From Haliotis rufescens (Eukaryota), in assembly GCF_023055435.1 (NCBI RefSeq), contig NW_025964223.1:18042001-18106000 (forward strand): DNA of 64,000 nucleotides. Reading direction: 5' to 3'. Positions 43,630 through 60,493 of the stretch are shown here, piece by piece. The notes below the pieces were generated by a model, which was not told the origin of the DNA, ran no database searches, and saw only the letters and a list, made by a program, of their open reading frames with translations. Each line of letters begins with the position of its first letter. Position 1 is the first letter of the stretch. The translations under genes were made by a program, and so were the position numbers.

Positions 43630-46600
43630 TTATGAAGACTCCGACACACCTCTTCTTCTAGCGCTTTTGTTAACGTTCCCCTGAAACAGACCACGGAGTG
43701 TCATAAACAAATGATACATGACACATGCAGATGTTTCAGGGTATAAATTATATATTCATTAACCATGTATGTTCAGTATAGCAGGTTTCATACTTTATAA
43801 TGTGATCATTTTCTGGTTATTATTCAAGTGATTTAGTATGGCACCCTACATACAATTTCAAGTGCCTAACATACCTAAATATGGTCATCAACAATCTATA
43901 TAAGGATATTAAGTCGTTTCAATCGTTATATCGTATGAGGTTTGAGGGATATTTTGATAATAGCATGTGAACGTACAAGAGGGCCTCTCCAAAGATCCAC
44001 GCCTCTCTTGATGATCGGACACTTTGGTTGCAGTTCCTCATGCCGGAGATAAGGATCATCAGTAGAGTCCCAGTCCAAAGCCTGGCATCCGCAGTGATAG
44101 CAAGTCAGACCGGTCCCCTTACCTGGTGGGAAGGACACATGGGAAAACTACAGATAAAAGCAAACAGATGAGTCCGACCTCAGTACCTGGAGTGGAAGGA
44201 AGCATGAGAACACTGCGGACAGAAGCAAGCAGATGAGACCAGCCTCTGCACGTGGAGTGGGAGAAAGCATGAGAACACTGCGGACAGAAGCAAGGAGATG
44301 AGACCGGCCTTCGTACCTGGAGTGGAAGGAAGCATGAGAACACTGCGGACAGAAGTAAGCAGATGACACCCTCCTCCGTACCTGGAGTGGAAGGAAGCAT
44401 GAGAACAATACAGACAGAAGCAAGTAGGTGAGACCAGCCTGTGCACGTGGAGTGGGAGGAAGCATGAGAACACTGCGGACAAGAGCAAGCAGATGAGACC
44501 GGCCTCCGTACCTGGAGTGGAAGGAAGCATGAGAACATTACAGACAGAAGCAAGCAGATGAGACCCGCCTCTGCACGTGGAGTGGAAGGAAGCATGAGAA
44601 CACTGAGGACAAGAGCAAGCAGATGAGACCGGCCTTCGTACCTGGAGTGGAAGGAAGCATGAGAACACTGCGGACAGAAGTAAGCAGATGACACCCTCCT
44701 CCGTACCTGGAGTGGAAGGGAGCATGAGAACACTGCGGACAGAAGTAAGCAGATGAGACCCGCCTCTGCACGTGGAGCGGGAGGAAGCATGAGAACACTG
44801 CGGACAAGAGCAAGCAGATGAGACTGGCCTCCGTATCTCGAGTGGAAGGAAGCATGAGAACAATGCAGACAGAAGTAAGCAGATGACACCCTCCTCCGTA
44901 CCTGGAGTGGAAGGAAGCATGAGAACAATACAGACAGAAGCAAGCAGATGAGACCGGCCTTCGTACCTGGAGTGGAAGGGAGCATGAGAACACTGCGGAC
45001 AGAAGTAAGCAGATGAGACCGGCCTCCGTACCTGGAGTGGAAGGAAGCATGAGAACAATACAGACAGAAGCAAGCAGATGAGACCGGCCTCCGTACCTGG
45101 AGTGGAAGGAAGCATGAGAACAATGCAGACAGAAGCCAACAGATGAGACCGGCCTCCGTACCTGGAGTGGAAGGAAGCATGAGAACACTGCGGACAGAAG
45201 TAAGCAGATGGCACCCTCCTCCGTACCTGGAGTGGAAGGAAGCATGAGAACAATACAGACAGAAGCAGGCAGTTGAGACCGGCCTCCGTACCTGGAGTGG
45301 AAGGAAGCATGAGAACAATACAGACAGAAGCAAGTAGGTGAGACCAGCCTCTGCACGTGGAGTGGGAGGAAGCATGAGAACACTGCGGATAAGAGCAAGC
45401 AGATGAGACCGGCCTCCGTATCTCGAGTGGAAGGAAGCATGAGAACAATACAGACAGAAGCAAGTAGGTGAGACCAGCCTGTGCACGTGGAGTGGGAGGA
45501 AGCATGAGAACACTGCGGACAAGAGCAAGCAGATGAGACCGGCCTCCGTACCTGGAGTGGAAGGAAGCATGAGAACATTACAGACAGAAGCAAGCAGATG
45601 AGACCCGCCTCTGCACGTGGAGTGGAAGGAAGCATGAGAACACTGAGGACAAGAGCAAGCAGATGAGACCGGCCTTCGTACCTGGAGTGGAAGGAAGCAT
45701 GAGAACACTGCGGACAGAAGTAAGCAGATGACACCCTCCTCCGTACCTGGAGTGGAAGGGAGCATGAGAACACTGCGGACAGAAGTAAGCAGATGAGACC
45801 CGCCTCTGCACGTGGAGCGGGAGGAAGCATGAGAACACTGCGGACAAGAGCAAGCAGATGAGACTGGCCTCCGTATCTCGAGTGGAAGGAAGCATGAGAA
45901 CAATGCAGACAGAAGTAAGCAGATGACACCCTCCTCCGTACCTGGAGTGGAAGGAAGCATGAGAACAATACAGACAGAAGCAAGCAGATGAGACCGGCCT
46001 TCGTACCTGGAGTGGAAGGGAGCATGAGAACACTGCGGACAGAAGTAAGCAGATGAGACCGGCCTCCGTACCTGGAGTGGAAGGAAGCATGAGAACAATA
46101 CAGACAGAAGCAAGCAGATGAGACCGGCCTCCGTACCTAGAGTGGAAGGAAGCATGAGAACAATGCAGACAGAAGCCAACAGATGAGACCGGCCTCCGTA
46201 CCTGGAGTGGAAGGAAGCATGAGAACACTGCGGACAGAAGTAAGCAGATGACACCCTCCTCCGTACCTGGAGTGGAAGGAAGCATGAGAACAATACAGAC
46301 AGAAGCAGGCAGTTGAGACCGGCCTCCGTACCTGGAGTGGAAGGAAGCATGAGAACAATACAGACAGAAGCAAGTAGGTGAGACCAGCCTCTGCACGTGG
46401 AGTGGGAGGAAGCATGAGAACACTGCGGACAAGAGCAAGCAGATGAGACCGGCCTCCGTATCTCGAGTGGAAGGAAGCATGAGAACAATGCAGACAGAAG
46501 CCAACAGATGAGACCGGCCTTCGTACCTGGAGTGGGAGGAAACATGAGAAGAATGCAGACAGCGCGCAGCGCAGACCTGGTATGGATGAACACTTAATGG

Positions 46601-47055
46601 ATAGTTAATTTGGAAACATATATGCGATCACATGCACTGTCAATAGGCAACTCTCCTTTATACTTTATATATCAGAAAAAATAGTATCAGTGTGTGTGAA
46701 TTAGGCTTTTCACCCAGGCTTATAGTCTAACACATCAGCTACTGATGTTACCTGTATGGTAGAACCCTGCCGCGGCTATAGTCTCTAGCCTACTAGATGT
46801 CATGTCCGAGATTTCTTCACCAGCCTCCAGCAAGGTTTCGATTCGCTCTCTCAGGGTCATCCAAACACGAGGGTACCTGGAGGGACGCTGGGATATCAGT
46901 GCCACCATCTCCTGTAGGTTCATCTGGTGACTCGGTCTCATCCCCGCCAAGACTTGGGAGATGATCTCACGCCAATCACGAGTGAAGGCGCGAGGAATTG
47001 AGCGTAAGTCACTGTCCAGAAGGTAGGGGTATTTTCCGCGGAAATTAGGACGCAT
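43630..47055 (-). CDS. BIR-only protein, ~166 aa; exons 47055-46752, 44122-43977, 43680-43630
   Basis: RERIETL..IAAAGFYHT/G joins in phase 1 to KGTGLTCYHCGCQALDWDSTDDPYLRHEELQPKCP (C-x2-C-x16-H-x6-C). Terminal exon GNVNKSARRRGVSESS* is followed directly by AATAAA (plus-strand 43621-43626). CDS 501 nt. Confidence 0.85.
44125..46560. repeat. Intronic minisatellite, 65-bp unit, ~37 copies, with a 1040-bp (16-unit) higher-order duplication
   Basis: Unit agcatgagaacactgcggacagaagcaagcagatgagaccggcctccgtacctggagtggaagga. The variant order at ~44400-45440 recurs at +1040. Confidence 0.97.
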
Positions 47056-48042
47056 TTGGCTGAAATCACACATAAGAAAAACACATTAATCAAAATATTA
47101 ATCAGAAATAGCAATGGTCCAAGGCGCTTCCTCGTGTCAAGTCAAGTATCAAAGTATCTTCTCAAACTATGTGTCAGGAGAGAGAGAAAACATATCATTT
47201 TAGCATGTAACATATTATTTAGTATTTACTTATTCTGATTTGGGCAGAGATTTCTTGTTAGTATGGACAAGGGTTAGTCGCTTCTACATGTTTAAATGAC
47301 ATGAGGCATGACCCCATGCGTTTAATCCATTGTAAAGGCAAATATCTAGGATATATCGCACAGCCACGTAGCGCTATTTTCATTTACAGAAGCAATTACA
47401 AATTCCAGTTTGACCGCTGCGCATGTCATTTCAAGCATGTGTACAGATGAGGCGTTTTTTGAAAGTTCTCTTTTTTAATGCTATTTTAGTTATAGTATAC
47501 AACTTGGTATATTGATTGATAAATATATTGTTTGATATTTTGTCTGCAAAACTATACCAGGCACTGTTTGAAAATGAGTAAGTTTTGATATCGCTTACCT
47601 CAATGCTTCTGCGGGTAAATACCGTTTGAAGAACGAGCATGGTATGGATTTCTTTATCCGGCCGGTGAGCTGTGTATAATAATAGAATTGACGTGTCGTT
47701 GTCACACTATCACATGCAGGTATTGTAAGCGTGATGCATGACACACTTATATCTTCTCACCCAACTATTGATGTGGTCGACCTATTTCTAGGTGTTATAT
47801 TTCAAGAATTTCTAAGACGTTTAACCTTTGAATAGCATTGTTTAATCATAACAAGACATGTAATTTACCTTTTCCCTGAGCGTGTCTATATTTGTAACTA
47901 ACATTTGTTAAATCTTCTGGGCAGTTGTGATATTTTTGTTTAAATGAGTCGAATTCAAAGGATATTCTATATATAGGTAATGTAAGAGTGCATGTATGAG
48001 TCGCACGACTCTCCCACGACATAACTGACGCTATTGCCATTA

Positions 48043-50690: not shown

Positions 50691-51230
50691 GGAGAACTAA
50701 GAGACGTACATGATTTGTTACTGTTGTGAGCGGGATTGCTCCACGGCATTTTGTTTGTTGTCAGGGCTAGGTCAAGACGCTGTAGTCATGCCCTGTCTGA
50801 AACTGAGACCCTTTATGTATTTAATTAAGGAAATCATTTACTGTGAGCATAAGTTACAATGTGCAATTTCAGCTGAGAAACGAAGGGTTGATTCAAAGTT
50901 GCAGTGTCTTTCCAATGTTCCTGCAGTAAAATGATACGGTCTGATGCTGTTCAGAAAGGGATGCACGAGTGAACATGACTGTGACCTGTTTCACTTGTGA
51001 TACGAGATAGACGAAACAATGTAAATACTTGTGAAATGAAATACAAACACGTTACACATAATGAAAGCCACCGATTTATAATATTTATATATAACATTAC
51101 ACCTAGTCCCTCTTTAAACAGATTAGGATCATATATTCTTCTTTAGTCGTTCAGCAAATCTGAAACCAGTAATTCCAGCAAGAGTATTGTCTTGTGTCCA
51201 CAGAAAATCGTAAGGTTTCGTGATTCAACA

Positions 51231-52928
51231 ATGAACAGATCCACTGGCAGACATCAGAGTTATGAATGCGAAGATGTTGGAGGGATTCTCAGCGATTTTA
51301 TGAACGCAAAACTGCAGGAACCGTACGCCCACTGCAACGTGGAATGCATCGGATTGACGCTGAGACAGAAGATGCTGCTGTTATACCAACCACCAACATC
51401 CAAACCGCAACATCGTCGTCTGTGGAATACAGAGGACAGACTCGACACACTGATGGCAGCTACAGACAATATTGCTGACATTCCTGCTGCTGGACTCGCT
51501 ACCATTGCTCAAGCAGGCTTCTTCCACTCAGGTAGAGTTTAAAACCTGTGCATACAACATTGTTGAGATATATTAGTACATACTTTTGTTATGTAAATGT
51601 CATCCTCTATGAAGACAGCCGCCGTGATATTGCTGGAATATTGCTAAAAGCGGCATAAAACCATACTCACTTTTAAGATAACATTATATCCCAAATAATT
51701 CTATCATAATAGATACCATGGACTTATGCTTCACCACAGCTTCGGTTAGAGTCCGATTCAAATGTCACATGCTTAATAACCGTCCAATCCAATTACACTC
51801 ATGTTATGTCGGATCTTAATGATCTGAGAAATGAAGATGTTACGTCAACTCATATACAACTGGCACATGTTCCGATTTAAGGATGCGCAAATAGAATATT
51901 GGGAGATATTCCTATTCAGGTTTTCTATCCGCAGGGACTGATAACACCTTGACGTGTTTCTCCTGTGGCTGCCACGCCCACGGTTGGAGTGTTGACGATG
52001 ATCCCTGGAGGCGACATGCGGAGCTGCAGATGACGTGCCCGGTGTTGTGCAGGAACGTCTACACACAAATCAAGGAAGGGGTAAATGACTATGAGTGAGT
52101 GAGTGAGTATGCTTTTACGCCGCCTTTAGCAATATTCCAGCAATATCACGGCGAGGGACACCTGAAATGACTATGAAATATGCCGTCTCCATATCGTACC
52201 GAATCTACATTAGACCATTATGAACACGTTTCAAACCTCTAAGCTGAACACCGTCGTTGGTTTACCTCCTATGTATATATTATGCTTTAGCTGATGACCG
52301 TGTATCCCTTATTGAAAGATTCGTACTGAACAACTACAGCATGTTGGATAGAAAAAGCCGTCGAACAATTTCTAAAATGTGTTTTGTATAAATAAGTGAC
52401 ACAGACCCGATTTAGCGTTTCTCACCATCATACTGACAAATGCAGTATTAACATTAGACTAGCATTCAGTCTTAAAATCGTATATTACACAATATCCTTC
52501 TTGACTCTAAAAATATAAAAATAAAAATTTCCCTATGCTGATTTCATAGAGAGCTAGCTATATCTGGCTAGACTTGCTTTTGTATGCGTTTCTAGATTAT
52601 TATTTTTTCATAAAATAAATATATTCAACAATCATGGTGCAGGGCTATATTTACATCAACACAAACCTTCTGTTCATTGTGTGTTTGGCGAAGTTAGTAT
52701 CTGCGCTCAAAACCTTAAGTTAGAAAGGGTTTTTTTAATCAGTGTGGTTAAACATTAAATGGCATGTAAGAAGAGGGGATACTTCTGCAAACGTTTATCA
52801 GCCTGTGCCAATATTCCTCATCAGGTGACCTCATGTTGCAGAGCATCGCCTACAGGCCCAGGACACGCCATTTCTCGGATAGTGGCGCAAGTCCACCACC
52901 TGCCAGCTATACCAGAACTCTTCACTAG
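51231..52928 (+). CDS. BIR-only protein, paralogue of the 43630-47055 gene; exons 51231-51531, 51935-52080, terminal exon uncertain (52842-52928, 52825-53088 or 53159-53221)
   Basis: EDRLDTL..IAQAGFFHS/G joins TDNTLTCFSCGCHAHGWSVDDDPWRRHAELQMTCP. Exon sizes 301/146 nt mirror 304/146 nt in the minus-strand paralogue. Confidence 0.8.
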
Positions 52929-54165
52929 TCAACATCTGGAATATCATAACCAACAATTGCATATAACCTTCTTTATTCTGGTTATGTTTCTTCAAAACTT
53001 GATCAAGATCACATTTCTCACAAAATTATATACACAACAATCCTATTCAGTACAAAACACCTGTACTTTCTTATGTCATCAATGCTGATGAAAATGTTTG
53101 AATTATTGTGATCGTTTATATATTGATTTCTGTCAAAATACTAACTCCTATTTCTCAGGCGTTCATTTATGAGGATTGTTCATGTCAATGTACATGTTGT
53201 ATGTGTAGGGGATATCAGTGATATGTGTGGAGACAGAGGTCTGCAAAGAGTCATCTGAATACTGAATGAAATCTAATACAAGTGAGCAAACTAATGTATA
53301 TGTACATGACCTGTATTCAAACTCGAATGCATATTGCCACTGGTTCCACACATATTTGTGTGATGACTTAATTTATGAACACGATACACCCCCACATATT
53401 TCGTGTACAATGCTTTAGGGAATGACGACCAACATAGGTAGTCCAGAAGCTGGTATCTAACATGACCATTTTAAGGTGAATACACATTTCAGTAGTCTTG
53501 AGAGAGAGAAATTTTCATGCTGTCGCGTCAAACCACATTCATTCATTTATTGCAATTCTACAAAAATACTTTTGAGATACAGAATGGATGCAAGAACATA
53601 TGAATATTTGGATTTTTAATGCACAAACAGTATATATAGTGAAATGCATCTATTCCTAAAAAATAGACTGAACGGTAGGGACATGTTTTTTACCAGGTTT
53701 TGATGAGATGTTACCCGGTTGGTCCGATCCTTGAGATGAACGAAGATCATTCTAGGTGACATTTTAATGCCTGAATGGAAAACACATTTCTATCATTATT
53801 TGTGATGCAAAACAACGAAACCCGACATTTTAAGAATAACTCACTGACTGTGACAGTTTATATAATTTCATATATATTTTTTATTCATTAATAAAACTGA
53901 ACAAATTTTAAACTTTGAAGTGAAATTGGTTCCTTGTTAATAAAATATTGTACTTATAGCAAAATATGTTGACAAATACGAAACTCACTTTACAGAAATT
54001 GAAGAAATAAAACAAATTTGTAATTGAATAAGTGGATTTACGGGTTACAATTGACAAATGAATCACTATGAATCTAATTAAATTTCTAAAACAATTTCGG
54101 AATAAATGATATATTGCAGCTTGTGTCCTCGTTTCCTTCTATGACAATTGTTACCGAAACATCCG

Positions 54166-54270
54166 TGACGTCAGATTCTATATTTAGTACATACGTGTTC
54201 ACGGAAAATAGATAGATTCCATGTTGGTGAGAGACGTGACGTGGATCCATGTACACCTGCGTATAACATA
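54166..54270 (+). promoter_or_regulatory. Candidate promoter of RING-only gene 1
   Basis: Full CRE TGACGTCA at 54166, gacgtgacgt at ~54233, TATA-like TATAACATA at 54262. Confidence 0.45.
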
Positions 54271-54319
54271 GTGGTAGTGTGTGGGAGCATCACATCCACC
54301 AAACACTCACGTCGTCAAG

Positions 54320-56801
54320 ATGCTGTCCGCACTGTTGCTGGTTGTTCTCGGGCTGTACACAGGTGAGGATCTTGTATAACAGTTACATACATACTGTTGC
54401 ATAACGTCTTGTCACATTCACTGTCTCCGTGGTCTTGTGGTAGTGCGTCCGCCCGTAGAGCGGAAGGTCCGGGGTTCGATCCCCGGCCGCGTATAGAGTG
54501 TGAGTGAGTTGGGTTTAACGCCGCTTTAAACAGTATTCCAGTTATATCACGGCGTGTCAGCTTAATGTGGGAGGAAAGCCCGAGGTGATGCAGGTCTCAG
54601 ACGGTTACTTCTTCGGTGAAACCCACGAGCACGGGTATGGTGCTGACATATAGTTGGGGCGAACCGGAATTCGAACCCACAATCATAGGTTTCTGCCGTG
54701 CCCAAGGGACGCAACTCTGCACAGCAAATCGCGGCGCCCTAGACGACTGGGTCACCCGTGCCCCCGACTGAATATAGACACTGGCCGTAACACAGATACT
54801 CGAAGGAAAAGTATGTAAAATAATGTATCTGTATGGGTTAACCTAGTGATTAGATTAACAGTGATTTTGATTATATAGACTATATTCATTCCCACGGGAG
54901 TCAACCGTCTATATGTGTGATTACACATTATATACCGGGTGATTGTTTCTGCTTCAATGCCAATTTGGAGTTACAAAGGTATTCAACATTCTCTTTGAAA
55001 CAACTATAAAGGGGAATGTAATAACCAGACACATTAGCTTATTTACATGTTACCTCCATGAAATATCCGAAACCCGAGTTGAGAGTCGAACCACCCTATC
55101 CAAAGGACCTGAGGTTGGTCCCGTCAGCAAGGTACATGTGTGTAACACCATCTTGAGGACAAATGTGGATGGTACTGCTACGTAAAATAATATTTTTTTC
55201 GAAATCTACTTGATCGATTGATTGGATATTCTGTGTATATTTATGCATTATACATACAGTCAAACGCACACGCACACGCACACGCACACGCACACGCACA
55301 CGCACATGCACATGCACAACCACGCACACACACAAACTCTTGCACATTGCAAAAGGCTATAAGCTAGATGTAGTATTTCCTGACTGAAAACGGACAAACA
55401 CATTCGATTATACAATGTAAGATATAACAAACTGAGGTTCTCATTGAATTCAAGCACTTCTAACGTCATGCATTGCAACATGAGGTGTAATTCTTAGATC
55501 ACGCTAAGGTGAGTGAATATGGTTTTACACCGCTTTTAGCAATAGTCAAGTAATATCACAGGGGGGGACACCATAAAATCACTGAGGATCGGTGAGGTGG
55601 CCTAGTGGTTAATGAGCTCGCTCGTCGCGCCGAAACCTCGGTTTCGGCTCCCCACATAGGTACAATGTGTGAAGACCATTTCTGGTGTCCCCCGCCGTGA
55701 TATTGTTGGAATATTGCTAAAAACCACATTCACTCACTCACTCACTCACTCACTCGATCGCATGAGAATGAGTGAATAACATCATTTCAGGCTTATTAAG
55801 ACGGCGAACATTAGAAATGGGCATCACCTATTGTTCGGCTTGAGTCACCGATTTGACCACTAGGCTACCCCCTTCTACCTTGATTACGAAAGAAAATTGT
55901 AAGACAGGTGACGGTTGTTTTAAAATTTGACTTCGAAATTAAGGTTATATTTGGGTTGGGCAGTAGAAGGCTTATTCTTTCAAATTTTACATTGACAATG
56001 CACACATTTGTGCCAAAAGACATTCACCTGAGCAAATCGCGCATATTCACATTTAAACAAGGACATGTTTCTAAGTGCGTAACGTTTCGTGGACGTGGTT
56101 ACCGTGTGGTTCAAGCTTTTGCCAAGACTCCACTCATGGGTACAATGTGTAAAGCCCACATCTGATATTTTCTGTTGGCGATATTACTGTATGTACAACA
56201 CTGATCCATAGATATGGAGATTACCAAATCACTCCCCACCCCCTCCATCCACCCTTCCAACACCCCAACACCCACCATCCTACATCAAATGGGGGCGTGG
56301 GGCTGGTGAGGCAGTTGTCAAAGGCTAAAATATTTACCGTGGAGAAATGTTCGAATCCCGGTTCGCTCGGATTTCTTTTCCAGCTTTGTCATCACAACTA
56401 ATTAAGCCCGACATCACTTAGGGCTTTCCTTCCATATTGGGAGCCTTAACCATTTACTTTTATGTGAAAATAGAAGTAAAGAAAGTAAATCATATGTAAG
56501 TAATGTGTTGGCAGGCGTATCATCGGTTTACTTGTAGTATTGCCTTACTGTCGCAGGTGTAGGAGAGGATGGGTCCACACAAAAAGCAGCCGGCCACAAA
56601 CCCAAAGGGGGATCACAGAGATCACACTCCCGGAAGTGGGGAAAGTGTAGGCGGTGCAAGGTGCGCAATGTCAACACAGTGTTCCTGCCGTGCGGTCACG
56701 TGGTGTGTTGTGCTGAGTGCAGCGTCGTCTCCAGGACGTGTGACGTATGCCATGCACGAATCAGAGGCAGTCTCAGAACCAGCCCATTACATGGGGATTA
56801 A
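54320..56801 (+). CDS. Hydrophobic-leader + IAP-type RING microprotein, ~95 aa; exons 54320-54362 and 56557-56801
   Basis: Exon 1 MLSALLLVVLGLYT/G (donor ag|gtgagg, phase 1) joins in frame to VGEDGSTQK..RKWGKCRRCKVRNVNTVFLPCGHVVCCAECSVVSRTCDVCHARIRGSLRTSPLHGD*. The RING exon is solid, though missed by the ORF track in this frame; the exon 1 join is inferred. Confidence 0.65.
54497..54766 (-). mobile_element. tRNA-derived SINE abutting a truncated Meta-SINE head (54424-54493, plus)
   Basis: Same family as 50460-50690. Confidence 0.8.
55263..55335. repeat. (GCACAC)n microsatellite
   Basis: Directly visible. Confidence 0.9.
55588..55755 (+). mobile_element. Short tRNA-derived SINE
   Basis: ggtggcctagtggttaa..ggtacaatgtgtgaag..ggaatattgctaaaa..(CACT)n. 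Confidence 0.8.
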
Positions 56802-57380
56802 TATGTCATTTAAAATATGATATGTATGGTGCTACAATTGAACAGTCTAGTATTTACTCTGGTTTCCTTTCGAAATAATATACATTCATACAAATCCAAA
56901 ATGTATGCATTGAATGCAGATGTGAGATGTATTTAAACATTTTTAATGTTTAGTGTATTCATTATATTAAGTTGATATATTGATTGAGAAAATATATGTT
57001 ATGGTTACTTAACTGTAGATAATAAAATACTGTACAGATTAACTAATTCCTGTGTTTTGTTTTGTGTTGAAAGTTAATATACCGCACCATGCATAGATTC
57101 AATGCAGGTAACATAGATGCATGTATTATGGAAATGTTCCGTTTTATTTGTATTGGTCTGCATTGAATAATTACAAGAGAGGATTTTAACAAGATAAATA
57201 ACACAACAGTAGTGGAATGTCGCATTTATGTGTACAAACGAAAAACGCTATTTTTAATACCTAATTGCAAATGCCAAAAGAAACTTTACCATAGTTTTAA
57301 ATCACTCTTTAAAAAACACAAAAGATAGATGCATGAAGTAAAATTGGTTGAAAGTTCAAAATCTCAACATAAACAATTAA

Positions 57381-57859: not shown

Positions 57860-58440
57860 AACGTGCAGGCCAATGCAATATGTTGCGTTGTTCCACGTGG
57901 CAGCTGTTGTAGTAATGGTAGGGCAATCGGACAAAGCATCTCATCCACGAAAAGCTGAGTTAAATGTTCGTTAACGATGACAAGCGGTGTTCTCTCCTTC
58001 TCACAAATTCGTCCCCACATCATAACACATCATCCACCATACGGTACGACCTCTTGAACGCAACACGCCGCCGTTCCTTCTCCCGTTCGGCGGTAAACAC
58101 ACTTTCTGTCACGTCGCTGCCAACGGCGAACAGTCCGGGTCCATCTCAATGTCTGAAGACGATGTTGCGCTGTCAATAACTGTCCTCTGTTAGGTTTGTA
58201 AGCCCTAATGTCTTGAGCTCGGAGTCGCCTGGCCACTGTCAGTCGACTAACCATATGCCCTAAGGCATTCGTCGCTGATGACGTCACTTTCAGGGATCGA
58301 TCCCGGAGATGCAATGTACGCAAGTACCGGTCTTCATTAGGCGTAGTTACCCTGGGTCTCCCTGTTCGCGGTCTGTCTGATGTATGCCCGGTCTGTCTGT
58401 AACGTTGCAACAGGTTAGTTACAGCTACATGGAAGCAACC
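57860..58440 (-). mobile_element. Degenerate Tc1/mariner transposase
   Basis: RPRTGRPRVTT..EDRYLR..VSRLTVARRLR HTH region followed by VYRR..GG*CVMMWG..RTPLVIV. Stop codon and deletions present. Confidence 0.88.
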
Positions 58441-58449
58441 AACAGTCAG

Positions 58450-58672
58450 ACGTACATGTGTGTTCACTATCTTCACCCGTCCACTCAGTCAGAAGTACAT
58501 GTGTGTTCACTATCTTCACTCGTCCACTCAGTCAGAAGTACATATGTGTTTATTATCTTCACCCGTCCACTCAGTCATAAGAACATATGTGTTCATTATC
58601 TTCACCCGTCCACTCAGTCATAAGAACATATGTGTTTATTATCTTCTCCCGTCCACTCAGTCATAAGAACAC
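58450..58672. repeat. Short tandem array, ~43-bp unit, ~5 copies
   Basis: acatgtgtgttcactatcttcacccgtccactcagtcagaagt repeated. Confidence 0.9.
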
Positions 58673-59887: not shown

Positions 59888-60055
59888 GGGAAAACCACAG
59901 TGCGTAAATATACTGATGACGTTGGGCTATAAATACCGACAAGTGACTGTTGACTAACCCACTGTGAGGTTAGTCCCTCATAACAGTCACACATCTCGGG
60001 CGGCGTGCAACGTGTGGAGGTACAGTTAACGACGAGTTAACTCCCTTAGGTAAGC
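59888..60055 (+). promoter_or_regulatory. Promoter and non-coding exon 1 of RING-only gene 2
   Basis: kB-like GGGAAAACCA at 59888, TGACGT at 59917, TATAAATA at 59928. ATG-free exon ends at donor tag|gtaagc (60050); acceptor ccag ends at 60266. Confidence 0.65.
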
Positions 60056-60280
60056 ACAAGCTGCAGTACAACCTCAGTGTTATGTGAATGTACTTCCAAT
60101 AGTAGACTGATGCCTATGAAACCATGGCCATCACTCACTTTCATAGAACATTTCAAAATCTAACACTATTGTGCTGAATACGTGTAAAATGATGTTATAT
60201 AATGTGTATGGTATGCATTGTGCACACAGAGATGCATGATCATGCACTTGTGTTGTCTGACGCCAGGTGCACATCGGAGG

Positions 60281-60493
60281 ATGTCAGCTGACTCTGTCAA
60301 ATCTGGTTACGGTAAAAGACCCCGTACTTCATCTCACCGGAAGCATGGGAAGTGTCGGTCATGTCGGCAGAAAGACGTGTGTCTTGTGTTTCTACCCTGT
60401 GGTCACGTGGTGTGTTGTGATGACTGCGGCGCGTCCCTCAACACGTGTGTGGTGTGTGACCGACCCATCAGGGGCAGTATCAGAACCTATTGA
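60281..60493 (+). CDS. IAP-type RING-only microprotein, 70 aa
   Basis: MSADSVKSGYGKRPRTSSHRKHGKCRSCRQKDVCLVFLPCGHVVCCDDCGASLNTCVVCDRPIRGSIRTY*. Intact C3HC4 with IAP-like tail; AATAAA near 60714. Confidence 0.82.
   Translation: MSADSVKSGYGKRPRTSSHRKHGKCRSCRQKDVCLVFLPCGHVVCCDDCGASLNTCVVCDRPIRGSIRTY

What the first reader, a model, noticed from the sequence alone, without database searches (positions are those of the whole stretch)
54320..56801. Signal-peptide or membrane-anchor exon fused to an IAP RING (95-aa microprotein)
Seen: about 50 nt after a TATA-like box and CRE sites, a 43-nt exon encodes MLSALLLVVLGLYT/G and ends in a strong phase-1 donor matching the phase-1 RING exon. Established: IAP RINGs are normally cytosolic and preceded by BIRs. 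Inference: a secreted or membrane-tethered, basic, Cys-rich RING peptide (organelle-anchored E3, or a RING fold co-opted extracellularly). Caveat: ATG 56569 sits in the same context (gaggATG) as the paralogue's start codon but is out of frame with the RING, so the gene may instead be frameshifted and dead, or rescued by this leader exon.
Basis: partly seen in the sequence, partly recalled or inferred. Interest (0 to 1): 0.8.

Follow-up and report, generated by a model that had tools for sequence, protein, structure and literature searches.

The report
Abalone RING microprotein with signal-like leader
A tiny abalone gene appears to place a secretion-type leader in front of a zinc-binding RING domain copied from cell-death-inhibitor genes, an unusual pairing that is kept in a second gene copy and in a related abalone species.

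Summary
A 43-nt ORF (54320-54362, MLSALLLVVLGLYT, GT donor, phase 1) lies 2.2 kb upstream of a phase-1 exon (56557-56801) encoding a basic linker plus an IAP-type RING (Pfam zf-C3HC4_3, 8.4e-10).

New evidence favours the leader-plus-RING model over the dead, frameshifted gene:
- A paralogue 25.6 Mb away on the same contig (L003) has the same architecture: a 43-nt leader (MLSRILLLLLGLYT), the same donor phase and an open RING exon.
- Between the two loci only the leader (74% identical) and the RING exon (72%) are conserved. Flanks sit at background (40-48%; unrelated pieces 43±5%).
- dN/dS in the RING frame is 0.25 (p=1e-5), and 0.26 in the 29-codon linker.
- The window's RING-frame exon has no Met, so it needs an upstream start.
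- The Haliotis rubra RefSeq protein XP_046548285/6 (92 aa) begins MIYRMLVVLLGLYTG and runs straight into the RING.

RNA contigs show that the neighbouring BIR-only gene ends in its own third exon, so the RING exon is not its terminal exon. No 54362/56557 junction was seen, but that check was swamped by SINEs and is not decisive.

Secretion is inferred only. The hydrophobic core is too short for a membrane helix, and SignalP was not available. This is a new variant of a known kind; no paper describing it was found.

The parts
54166..54173 (.). Palindromic CRE-like site TGACGTCA, 147 nt upstream of the leader ATG. Weak, possibly promoter.
   Evidence: 4 sites in the window against 1.16 expected; 2 of 100 shuffles reach 4. 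Not conserved in L003, where the upstream region is 44% identical, which is background.
54262..54267 (+). TATA-like TATAAC, 53 nt upstream of the ATG. Unverified.
   Evidence: Read. No start-site data.
54289..54319 (+). Moderately conserved 31 nt before the ATG, probably 5' UTR. Has A at -3.
   Evidence: 20 of 32 alignment columns identical with L003 (62.5%), against a background of 42.9 +/- 4.9%. blastn island 54289-54492.
54320..54362 (+). Coding part of the leader exon: MLSALLLVVLGLYT plus the first base of a Gly codon. Phase-1 donor, GT at 54363-64.
   Evidence: Homologous 43-nt exon in L003. 32 of 43 nt identical. Only 2 copies in the 1.33-Gb genome at up to 3 mismatches. Same 14-residue leader plus Gly in H. 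rubra XP_046548285/6.
54363..56556 (+). 2194-nt intron filled with SINE copies and a (CACG/CA)n microsatellite at about 55265-55335. The matching intron in L003 is about 720 nt.
   Evidence: Contig depths of 1e5 and more over 54449-54842 and 55631-55827 show high-copy repeats. Intron sequence outside the SINE head is at background identity with L003 (40-48%).
56557..56645 (+). First part of exon 2: the last two bases of the split Gly codon plus a 29-codon basic linker (VGEDGSTQKAAGHKPKGGSQRSHSRKWGK). It contains no Met.
   Evidence: Linker dN/dS 0.26, Fisher p 0.006, no indel against L003.
56569..56571 (+). Out-of-frame ATG (+1 relative to the RING frame) in the context gaggATG. Opens an 83-aa ORF unrelated to the RING.
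   Evidence: The same offset is present in L003. No indel here in the X16 contig 56197-57000: its 9 gaps are accounted for at 56252 and 56347.
56646..56750 (+). IAP-type C3HC4 RING with all eight zinc ligands present (C-x2-C ... C-x-H-x3-C-x2-C ... C-x2-C).
   Evidence: Pfam PF13920 8.4e-10. PDB cIAP2 3eb5 1.1e-10. Ligand columns invariant in 10 of 10 aligned sequences. dN/dS 0.20 against L003. AlphaFold core pLDDT about 75 and all top Foldseek hits are RINGs.
56751..56801 (+). C-terminal tail (HARIRGSLRTSPLHGD) and the TAA stop.
57021..57026 (+). First canonical AATAAA after the stop; possible poly(A) signal. Unverified.
   Evidence: Read. X3 shows no depth in 56813-57000, so the 3' end is unknown.

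Best explanation
This is a functional two-exon gene and not a frameshifted relic.

Gene model:
- Exon 1 supplies the only usable start codon and a 14-residue hydrophobic leader (MLSALLLVVLGLYT).
- It is spliced in phase 1, through a split Gly codon, to an exon that encodes a basic 29-residue linker, an IAP-derived C3HC4 RING and a short tail. The product is 95 aa.

Leader properties:
- It looks like a cleavable ER signal peptide: a short n-region, an 8-12 residue hydrophobic core, then small residues (T-G-V-G) before an acidic stretch.
- It is too short to span a membrane.

Most likely mechanism (inferred):
- The peptide enters the secretory pathway and the leader is removed.
- The RING-derived part is cationic (pI about 9.7) with 8 Cys. 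It would act in the lumen or outside the cell, not as a cytosolic E3.
- This fits the replacement of canonical E2- and ubiquitin-contact positions: C-K-I-C becomes C-R-R-C, and C-P-V-C-R becomes C-D-V-C-H.

Shown:
- the exon anatomy;
- conservation of both exons;
- purifying selection in the RING frame;
- the same architecture in a congener's gene model.

Inferred:
- splicing at this particular locus;
- ER targeting;
- leader cleavage;
- loss of E3 function.
For: 1. The paralogue L003 (G000:C445, 25.6 Mb away) has the same architecture: a 43-nt leader encoding MLSRILLLLLGLYT, the same phase-1 GTGAG donor, and a RING exon open in phase 1. There are only 2 leader copies in the genome.
2. Between the two loci only two islands align. 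The leader is 74.4% identical and the RING exon 71.9%. Upstream is 44.1%, the intron 40.4-48.1%, the 3' flank 51.9%. Unrelated pieces give 42.9 +/- 4.9%.
3. All changes in the leader's hydrophobic core are hydrophobic-for-hydrophobic, and 4.5 of the 11 nucleotide differences are synonymous.
4. dN/dS for the RING-frame exon is 0.25 with dS about 0.8 (Fisher p 1e-5). The linker gives 0.26 (p 0.006) and the RING 0.20. There is no indel in the linker.
5. The window's exon-2 peptide has 0 Met, so a constrained coding exon needs an upstream start.
6. The exhaustive HMMER search's best hit is P0001 (92 aa, E 3.4e-26). It is XP_046548285.1/XP_046548286.1 of Haliotis rubra, and its sequence starts MIYRMLVVLLGLYTG and continues directly into the linker and RING. 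It is 84% identical to L003's exon and 63% to the window's.
7. An L004-like RING-only gene (XP_046548280) lies on a scaffold of the same recorded length (579,955) and carries a nearby accession number, so the pair is probably adjacent in H. rubra too, as L003 and L004 are here.
8. The longest uncharged run in P0001 is 12 residues. No N-terminal 19-residue window reaches a membrane-helix hydropathy.
9. The exon-2 peptide has 15 K+R against 5 D+E, pI 9.75 and 8 Cys.
10. Part of the RING exon (56584-56708, 0 differences) is in run X3, which also holds spliced BIR contigs. That contig's right end is exactly the k=31 break predicted by the 35-nt identity with L003 (56679-56713), so both paralogues' exons seem to be in that run.
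11. The out-of-frame ATG is not an assembly error. X16's contig 56197-57000 has its 9 gaps elsewhere, and X3 is identical over 56584-56708.
Against: - No contig or joint linking 54362 to 56557 was seen. Only 15 of 796 joints were printed and all of them came from SINEs, so this is not decisive.
- X2 record 18 (54045-54369) runs colinearly through the leader and 7 nt past the donor. X2 record 21 (56092-56586) runs colinearly across the acceptor. Both are unspliced RNA or DNA.
- X1 shows essentially no depth on the RING exon (0.41 and 0), so expression is at best conditional.
- X3 has no depth in 56813-57000, so the transcript's 3' end is unexplained.
- All four runs are only guessed to be RNA or are of unknown kind.
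- The leader's dN/dS (0.53 over 14 codons) is not informative on its own.
- The H. rubra protein is an automatic gene model whose RNA support I could not inspect.
- No annotated protein of this architecture was found in any other species in the collection, and that word-based search is insensitive (one search missed P0001).
- No signal-peptide predictor was available.
- RING folding needs zinc and reduced cysteines, which is awkward in the ER.
- The RING-only cytosolic paralogues share the C-R-x-C and non-Arg substitutions, so these changes do not by themselves point to relocation.
- A His linchpin is compatible with weak E3 activity in yeast Doa10 (PMC12326332 passages).
Confidence: 0.6

Rival explanations
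1. The same two-exon gene, but the leader is not cleaved. It tethers the protein to an organelle membrane with the RING in the cytosol. There it acts as a weak E3, or as a non-catalytic dimer partner or decoy for the many full-length IAP RINGs encoded nearby.
For: - IAP RINGs work as dimers through the RING, a preceding helix and the C-terminal tail (PMC6349121 passages).
- Cytosolic RING-only paralogues exist next door at 60281-60493 and at L004.
- The basic linker after the hydrophobic run would favour a cytosolic C-terminus.
- The window's copy has no positive charge before the core.
- Membrane-anchored proteins with IAP-type RINGs exist (MUL1, plant SP1/GIDE; rows, listing; their topology is recalled).
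- One unrelated 117-aa database protein (P0054) has a 22-residue hydrophobic N-terminus followed by lysines and an IAP-type RING.
Against: - The uncharged run is only 12 residues in P0001 and the core is 8-11 residues. The best 19-residue hydropathy window is not at the N-terminus. This is short for a membrane helix.
- The residues directly after the core are small and then acidic (T-G-V-G-E-D), which is typical of a cleavage region.
- L003 and H. rubra carry Arg at position 4, before the core, which favours the signal-peptide orientation.
Confidence: 0.2
2. It is a dead gene. A RING-only copy lost its frame between its own ATG (56569) and the RING, and the upstream 43-nt ORF is a chance ORF.
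For: - ATG 56569 sits in the same gaggATG context as the start of the 70-aa paralogue and is +1 out of frame.
- No junction contig was seen, and X1 has no depth on the exon.
- No annotated protein for this locus is in the collection.
Against: - The same offset and the same leader occur in L003, which diverged at dS about 0.8. Yet both RING exons stay open, without indels in the linker, at dN/dS 0.25.
- The leader is conserved well above neutral flanks.
- H. rubra's model joins leader and RING.
- In the 70-aa paralogue the ATG lies 14 nt after the acceptor, against 12 nt here. The two exons therefore differ by several indels, not by one lesion (read).
Confidence: 0.07
3. The RING exon is the terminal exon of the upstream BIR gene (51231-52080), making an ordinary BIR-RING IAP. 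The leader would then be intronic noise.
For: Same strand, 4.5 kb downstream of the BIR exons. BIR exon 1 also ends in phase 1.
Against: - Spliced contigs in two runs (X1 record 1, X3 record 22) join 51204-51528 | 51932-52079 | 52841-53157.
- The third exon has a stop at 52926-28 and a 3' UTR followed to 54103 (X1 record 5).
- BIR exon 2 ends in phase 0, incompatible with the phase-1 RING exon.
- L003 has the leader but no BIR within 10 kb upstream (L025), in L003 itself, or downstream in L004 and L024. About 5.8 kb between L004 and L003 was never fetched.
Confidence: 0.03
4. The transcript starts inside the intron, as in the 70-aa paralogue. It is translated from ATG 56569 into the +1-frame 83-aa product, or from a non-AUG codon in the RING frame.
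For: - The +1 ORF is open for 83 codons here and 68 codons in L003.
- The paralogue at 60.2 kb appears to use a nearby promoter and a non-coding first exon (inference).
Against: - Selection acts on the RING frame (dN/dS 0.25), including the 29 codons upstream of the RING.
- The +1 products differ in length and end.
- There is no similarity between the 60.2-kb promoter or first exon and the region upstream of 56557.
Confidence: 0.05

Closest known systems
RING domains of IAP/BIRC proteins (cIAP1, cIAP2, XIAP, BIRC7; the full-length IAPs in this window at 13.2 and 37.4 kb)
   Same: - Pfam zf-C3HC4_3.
- The best PDB sequence matches are cIAP2 3eb5 (1.1e-10), cIAP1 6hpr, BIRC7 4auq and XIAP.
- All eight zinc ligands and the FLPCGH core are kept.
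- It is a phase-1 terminal exon lying inside an IAP gene cluster.
   Different: - No BIR domain anywhere in the model.
- An N-terminal hydrophobic leader stands in place of the BIRs.
- C-K-I-C is C-R-R-C, C-P-V-C-R is C-D-V-C-H, and the helical E/Q-rich pre-RING linker is replaced by a basic Gly/Ser-rich one.
- The tail lacks the Phe/Tyr used in trans by dimeric IAP RINGs (PMC6349121 passages). The full-length IAPs of this window lack it too.
Haliotis rubra XP_046548285.1 / XP_046548286.1, 'death-associated inhibitor of apoptosis 1-like' (92 aa, automatic RefSeq model)
   Same: The same architecture: a 14-residue hydrophobic leader ending LGLYT, then Gly, a basic linker, a C-R-R-C RING and C-D-V-C-H.
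   Different: - It is the orthologue of the paralogue L003 (84% identical), not of the window's copy (63%).
- It is two residues shorter at the junction.
- It is named as an IAP although it has no BIR.
- No paper on it was found.
RING-only IAP derivatives of abalone: the 70-aa gene at 60281-60493, L004 (141 aa), H. cracherodii XP_071114771 (88% identical to L004) and H. rubra XP_046548280
   Same: - IAP-type RING without BIR.
- A R-(K)-W/H-G-K/R-C-R-x-C motif and a non-Arg residue after the last Cys.
- They lie directly downstream of the leader-RING gene at both loci.
   Different: - They start at an in-frame ATG inside the RING exon or in a Ser/Thr-rich N-terminal region, with no hydrophobic leader.
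- No relic of the leader lies upstream of them.
Membrane-anchored E3s with a C-terminal IAP-type RING (MUL1/MAPL, plant SP1 with a GIDE domain)
   Same: zf-C3HC4_3 RING at the C-terminus of a protein with hydrophobic targeting segments (structure row 6; PMC9304225 seen in a search listing only).
   Different: - They have full-length transmembrane helices and a large intervening domain, and the RING faces the cytosol (recalled, not tested).
- Here there is one short hydrophobic run and no second membrane segment.
PA-TM-RING ligases (RNF13, RNF128, RNF43/ZNRF3)
   Same: RING proteins that begin with a cleavable signal peptide (recalled). The RNF13 RING appears among weak fold matches, labelled 'PA-TM-RING E3 ligase'.
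   Different: - Those carry a luminal PA domain and a transmembrane helix that puts a RING-H2 back in the cytosol.
- This protein has nothing between leader and RING, so a functional signal peptide would place the RING itself in the lumen.

Membership tests
IAP / BIRC family | At least one BIR domain in the protein | tested here: not met
   Neither model exon has a BIR hit. The nearest BIR exons (51231-52080) belong to a separate spliced transcript that ends in its own third exon. No BIR was found in the DNA fetched around L003, which covers 10 kb upstream and most of the downstream side.
IAP-type RING (Pfam PF13920, zf-C3HC4_3) | Profile match above the curated cut-off | tested here: met
   38.7 bits against a cut-off of 27, E 8.4e-10. 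P0001 scores 38.5 bits.
IAP-type RING (Pfam PF13920, zf-C3HC4_3) | Eight zinc ligands C-C-C-H-C-C-C-C with canonical spacing | tested here: met
   The ligand columns C30, C33, C45, H47, C51, C54, C61 and C64 are invariant in 10 of 10 aligned sequences.
IAP-type RING (Pfam PF13920, zf-C3HC4_3) | RING cross-brace fold | tested here: inconclusive
   AlphaFold mean pLDDT is 63.7 and the core is about 75. The top Foldseek PDB hits are all RINGs (IDOL, cIAP1/2, XIAP, BIRC7), but the best E is 1.7e-3 with TM about 0.48.
Catalytically competent dimeric IAP RING E3 | Hydrophobic E2-contact residue in C-x-[IV]-C and Pro in C-P-x-C (roles recalled, not read here) | tested here: not met
   The alignment to cIAP2 and cIAP1 shows R for V and D for P. 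The full-length IAPs of the window have C-K-I-C and C-P-V-C.
Catalytically competent dimeric IAP RING E3 | Linchpin Arg after the last Cys; aromatic residue in the C-terminal tail acting in trans | tested here: not met
   His stands in place of cIAP1 Arg606, and the tail is ..LRTSPLHGD without Phe/Tyr (roles from PMC6349121 passages). Caveat: the linchpin varies among active E3s (XIAP Tyr, Doa10 His; PMC12326332 passages). Activity itself was not tested.
Classical cleavable ER signal peptide | Short n-region, hydrophobic core of about 7-15 residues, small uncharged residues at -3/-1 of a cleavage site | tested here: inconclusive
   Core LLLVVLGL has mean hydropathy 3.4. The uncharged run in the natural protein P0001 is 12 residues, and no N-terminal 19-residue window reaches membrane-helix level. 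T-G-V-G / T-G-T-G / T-G-G precede an acidic stretch. No trained predictor was available, and the joined model was not analysed as a whole.
Expressed spliced gene | RNA molecules that join 54362 to 56557 | tested here: inconclusive
   no such joint among the 15 printed (781 not printed). An identical 125-nt RING-exon contig is in X3. Colinear (unspliced) contigs lie over the donor and the acceptor in X2. The kind of all four runs is guessed or unknown.

The most novel reading that the evidence does not exclude
A RING finger has been moved into the secretory pathway. Abalone would make a small, cationic, eight-cysteine peptide derived from an IAP RING that is secreted or stored in vesicles. It would work outside the ubiquitin system, for example as a zinc- or disulfide-stabilised immune effector, or as a ligand released on stress. 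It arose by joining a phase-1 signal-peptide exon to the phase-1 RING exon of a duplicated IAP. It has been kept for a long time: dS is about 0.8 between paralogues, and it is present in H. rubra.
Probability: 0.35. Interest if true: 0.8.

Novelty: new variant of a known kind. Interest (0 to 1): 0.58.

Why it matters
RING fingers are, as far as I know, cytosolic or nuclear modules that work with E2 enzymes. A RING placed directly behind a signal peptide, with no membrane segment to return it to the cytosol, would be a rare case of this fold being reused outside the ubiquitin system.

It also shows how the very large mollusc IAP expansions can spin off new small genes by exon shuffling.

Surveys that define IAPs by their BIR domain cannot see such derivatives. 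Two large IAP surveys have no occurrence of 'signal peptide', 'transmembrane', 'RING-only' or 'secreted' in their main text; their supplements were not available to me.

The case is directly testable with a tagged construct, and two paralogues plus a congener sequence are in hand.

Tried and rejected
**Terminal exon of the BIR gene.** Rejected on spliced contigs and phase.

**Assembly error at the out-of-frame ATG.** Rejected. X16, X2 and X3 contigs show no indel between 56569 and the RING where they cover it, and L003 has the same offset.

**Segmental duplication of the pair (leader-RING + RING-only) in one event.** Not supported. The RING-only pair (60.2 kb against L004) is far more diverged (dS saturated at 3.2) than the leader-RING pair (dS 0.76). 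The order of events is left open.

**Leader relic upstream of the RING-only paralogues.** None found.

**Origin of the leader exon.** DNA 54130-54420 is unique in the genome and the pattern search finds only the two copies. No donor gene was found.

**Ancestral SINE at the same intron position.** Doubtful. The SINE head is 88.6% identical between the loci, higher than the exons, so independent insertions of an abundant family are as likely.

**Word-based protein searches.**
- The 80-aa exon peptide found nothing.
- P0001 and the alignment A2 each found only P0001.
- One search missed P0001, so these blanks are weak.

**ESM Atlas.** Gave only generic small RING clusters.

**Short database proteins with a RING.**
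- I read 26 and 8.
- A few have hydrophobic N-termini (P0046, P0048, P0054, P0076), but with canonical C-K-I-C RINGs and E/Q-rich linkers.
- P0046 clusters with a 796-aa BIRC2 of a clam, so these look like fragments or other first exons, not this family.

**ARAGORN on the intron.** No tRNA gene.

**Literature.** (search listings only) and the term look-ups found no description of a signal-peptide or membrane-anchored IAP-derived RING. Supplements of those surveys are closed and could list such architectures.

**Contig ends at 56584 (X3) and 56586 (X2).** I tried to read them as splice or allele branch points. Neither the 54362/56557 junction nor an acceptor at 56587 predicts them exactly, so they are left unexplained (note).

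**Joined model.** Whole-protein statements rest on the natural database protein P0001, and each exon of the window was handled apart.
Full report
**Setting.**
- The window is G000:C445:18042001-18106000 of a 1.33-Gb genome in 615 contigs.
- It holds a cluster of IAP-type genes:
  - full-length IAP RING exons at about 13.2 and 37.4 kb;
  - a BIR-only gene on the minus strand at 43.9-47.1 kb;
  - a BIR-only gene on the plus strand at 51.2-52.1 kb;
  - the RING exon of the finding at 56.5 kb;
  - a 70-aa RING-only gene at 60.3 kb.
- The closest named database proteins are from Haliotis rubra and H. cracherodii.

**The observation.**
- ATG 54320 opens a 43-nt ORF for MLSALLLVVLGLYT, followed by the first base of a Gly codon. 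It ends at CAG|GTGAGG.
- An in-frame stop lies at 54275-77 with no earlier ATG in between.
- The acceptor ..ctgtcgcAG| lies at 56555-56. The exon is open in phase 1 from 56557 to TAA 56799-56801. Together that makes 95 codons.
- The exon-2 peptide (80 aa) matches Pfam zf-C3HC4_3 above the curated cut-off (38.7 against 27 bits). It also matches the RINGs of cIAP2, cIAP1, BIRC7 and XIAP in the PDB.
- ATG 56569 is +1 relative to the RING frame.
- The promoter remarks are weak. The window has 4 TGACGTCA sites against 1.16 expected, and 2 of 100 shuffles reach 4. The upstream region is not conserved in the paralogue.

**Is the RING exon the end of the upstream BIR gene? No.**
- I laid contigs of four runs on 51100-57000. 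X1, X2 and X3 are guessed to be RNA; X16 is of unknown kind and probably DNA.
- X1 record 1 and X3 record 22 are spliced contigs joining 51204-51528 | 51932-52079 | 52841-53157. Allowing for shared letters, these are GT-AG introns at 51532-51934 and 52081-52841.
- The third exon reads on in phase 0 to a stop at 52926-28. Its 3' UTR is followed to 54103 (X1 record 5).
- BIR exon 2 ends in phase 0, which does not fit the phase-1 RING exon.
- The BIR-only gene is thus a transcription unit of its own, ending about 200 nt before the leader ATG.

**Direct RNA evidence for the leader-RING junction: not obtained.**
- The region is full of SINEs with contig depths of 1e5 and more. All 15 printed joints are repeat artefacts, and 781 further joints were not printed.
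- X2 record 18 (54045-54369) is colinear through the leader and 7 nt beyond the donor. X2 record 21 (56092-56586) is colinear across the acceptor.
- X2 also covers intron pieces at similar depth, so it holds unspliced RNA or DNA.
- X3 holds a 125-nt contig (56584-56708) identical to the RING exon, and it has no depth in 54843-55433.
- X1 has almost none on the exon.
- The right end of the X3 contig is exactly where a k=31 graph must break, because of a 35-nt identity (56679-56713) with the paralogue L003. This suggests that both paralogues' RING exons are present in that run.
- The left end (56584), the end of X2 record 21 (56586) and the lack of depth in 56813-57000 remain unexplained.

**The frame offset is real.**
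- X16's contig 56197-57000 has 19 differences and 9 gaps. The gaps are accounted for at 56252 (1) and 56347 (8), so there is no indel between ATG 56569 and the RING.
- X3 is identical over 56584-56708, and X2 covers 56569-56586 without a further gap.

**Comparative evidence: the paralogue.**
- I searched the whole genome with the exon-2 peptide and got 46 matches (67 candidates scored). The best non-self match is 71% identical over residues 2-78, at G000:C445:43672809-43673039 (L003), 25.6 Mb away.
- Read on its coding strand, L003 has about 760 nt upstream of its RING exon:
  - an ATG-initiated 43-nt ORF for MLSRILLLLLGLYT;
  - the same split Gly codon;
  - a GTGAGA donor.
- Its RING exon follows an ..acaAG| acceptor, is open in phase 1 to a TGA, and carries the same gaggATG in the +1 frame.
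- A degenerate pattern of the leader's 3' part finds exactly these two places in the genome, and none for the reversed control.
- blastn between the loci finds only two islands, 54289-54492 and 56555-56791.
- Identity by segment:

| Segment | Identity |
|---|---|
| -150..-32 | 44.1% |
| -31..-1 | 62.5% |
| Leader | 74.4% (32 of 43) |
| Intron up to the SINE | 40.4% |
| Last 100 nt of intron | 48.1% |
| RING exon | 71.9% |
| 3' flank | 51.9% |
| Unrelated pieces (200 trials) | 42.9 +/- 4.9%, maximum 57.6% |

- The leader is therefore as conserved as the coding RING exon and stands out from neutral flanks.

**Selection.**
- Nei-Gojobori estimates between the window and L003:

| Region | Codons | dN/dS | Other |
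|---|---|---|---|
| RING-frame exon | 74 | 0.25 | dS 0.76, Fisher p 1e-5 |
| Linker | 29 | 0.26 | p 0.006, no indel |
| RING | 45 | 0.20 | |
| Leader | 14 | 0.53 | too short to test |

- The leader's core substitutions are all hydrophobic for hydrophobic.
- The window's exon-2 peptide contains no Met. A constrained exon that is read in the RING frame from its first codon must receive its start from an upstream phase-1 exon. The leader is the only conserved candidate.

**A congener.**
- I searched 1.84 billion representative proteins exhaustively with HMMER. It found 1282 hits at E<=0.001 and 11 at E<=1e-10.
- The top hit is P0001: 92 aa, E 3.4e-26, with query residues 2-75 on protein residues 15-88.
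- Its sequence begins MIYRMLVVLLGLYTGGDAS.. and continues through the linker and a C-R-R-C / C-D-V-C-H RING.
- It is XP_046548285.1 / XP_046548286.1, 'death-associated inhibitor of apoptosis 1-like [Haliotis rubra]'.
- It is 84% identical to L003's exon and 63% to the window's, so it is the orthologue of L003.
- XP_046548280 of H. rubra (P0009) is an L004-like RING-only protein. It sits on a scaffold of the same recorded length and has a nearby accession number.
- In this genome L004 lies 9 kb downstream of L003, as the 70-aa gene lies 3.7 kb downstream of the window's gene.
- An independent annotation pipeline thus joined the same kind of leader to the same kind of RING in another species. 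I could not see its RNA support.
- Nothing else of this architecture was found in the collection, but that search is insensitive.

**What the leader is.**
- The three leaders have the same length and end in LGLYT plus Gly.
- The core (LLLVVLGL, ILLLLLGL, LVVLLGL) has hydropathy of about 3.3-3.4.
- The longest uncharged run in the natural protein P0001 is 12 residues. Its best 15- and 19-residue hydropathy windows lie in the RING, not at the N-terminus.
- After the core come small residues (T-G-V-G, T-G-T-G, T-G-G) and then Asp/Glu.
- L003 and H. rubra have Arg at position 4.
- From general knowledge of signal sequences (recalled), these are the features of a cleavable ER signal peptide and not of a signal anchor.
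- No trained predictor was available. By instruction I did not analyse the joined model.

**What the RING part is.**
- All zinc ligands are invariant. The AlphaFold core is modelled at moderate confidence, and its nearest structures are RINGs of IDOL, cIAP1/2, XIAP and BIRC7 (best E 1.7e-3).
- Against cIAP1/2 and the window's own full-length IAPs, C-K-[IV]-C is C-R-R-C, C-P-[IV]-C-R is C-D-V-C-H, and the tail has no Phe/Tyr.
- In cIAP1, Arg606 after the last Cys is the linchpin and Phe616 of the tail acts in trans (PMC6349121 passages).
- The linchpin is not always Arg in active ligases (PMC12326332 passages). The roles of the Ile/Val and Pro positions are recalled, not read here.
- The RING-only neighbours share these changes, so the changes predate or are independent of the leader.
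- The mature part is strongly basic (15 K+R against 5 D+E, pI 9.75) with 8 Cys.

**Reading.**
- Most likely this is a real gene that arose when a phase-1 leader exon was joined to the phase-1 RING exon of a duplicated IAP. It is kept under selection in two paralogues and in H. rubra.
- I estimate about 0.8 that leader and RING are one coding unit. I estimate about 0.5 that the leader works as a cleaved signal peptide. That gives 0.6 for the statement as worded.
- The main rival is an uncleaved membrane tether with a cytosolic, probably non-catalytic RING that pairs with IAP RINGs.
- The dead-gene and BIR-fusion readings are unlikely.

**Known or new.**
- The RING belongs to the IAP-type RING family, but the protein is not an IAP because it has no BIR.
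- The architecture exists as an unremarked automatic model in H. rubra.
- I found no paper describing an IAP-derived RING behind a signal peptide (search listings; term look-ups). Supplements of the IAP surveys were not available.
- I class it as a new variant of a known kind.

Noticed in passing
window 51204-54103 (+): The BIR-only gene has three coding exons, shown by spliced contigs in two runs: ..51531 | 51935-52080 | 52842.., with a stop at 52926-28 and a 3' UTR of about 1.2 kb reaching at least 54103. Record positions 1-110 of X1's contig lie outside the laid stretch, so there is probably a further 5' exon.
   Followed up: partly
window 59930-60493 (+): The 70-aa RING-only gene has its ATG 60281 in frame, 14 nt after a phase-1-compatible acceptor at 60266/60267. 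Upstream lie a TATAAATA box near 59930 and a possible non-coding first exon ending at 60049 (cccttag|gtaagc). The exact protein is not in the 15-billion-protein collection.
   Followed up: partly
L003/L004 (G000:C445:43663467-43673800, minus strand): A second leader-RING gene is followed 9 kb downstream by a 141-aa Ser/Thr-rich RING-only gene, which is 88% identical to H. cracherodii XP_071114771. H. rubra has XP_046548285/6 and XP_046548280 on a scaffold of the same recorded length, which suggests the same neighbours. The RING-only pair is much more diverged (dS saturated) than the leader-RING pair (dS 0.76).
   Followed up: partly
window 56679-56713: A 35-nt stretch is identical between the window's RING exon and L003's, inside exons that are otherwise about 72-75% identical. 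This could be strong constraint on the FLPCGHVVCC core or a small gene-conversion tract. It breaks k=31 contigs at exactly 56708.
   Followed up: partly
window 54424-54842, 55480-55830, 51600-51690, 52085-52165, 56080-56400: Several copies of abundant SINE-like elements: a tRNA-like head GGTCTxGTGGTAG..GGTTCGATCCC, and a second family beginning with a (GTGA)n / (CACT)n run. Contig depths reach 1e5-1e6 in all four runs. ARAGORN calls no tRNA gene in 54300-56600. They enlarged this intron to 2.2 kb, against about 0.7 kb in L003.
   Followed up: partly
window 44119-46593 (-): A GC-rich tandem array gives artefactual ORFs of up to 824 aa. It lies between the two BIR half-exons of the minus-strand BIR-only gene (46735-47073 and 43926-44138).
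   Followed up: no
window 58030-58476 (-): A remnant of a Tc1/mariner-type transposase N-terminus (Pfam HTH_Tnp_Tc3_2, 33 bits against a cut-off of 31.5) lies between the two RING genes.
   Followed up: partly
window 56581-56587: Contigs of two different runs end within 3 nt of each other here (X3 starts at 56584, X2 ends at 56586), at an A5 run followed by AG. An in-frame alternative acceptor at 56587 or a 3-nt indel allele would be possible. Neither fits exactly.
   Followed up: partly
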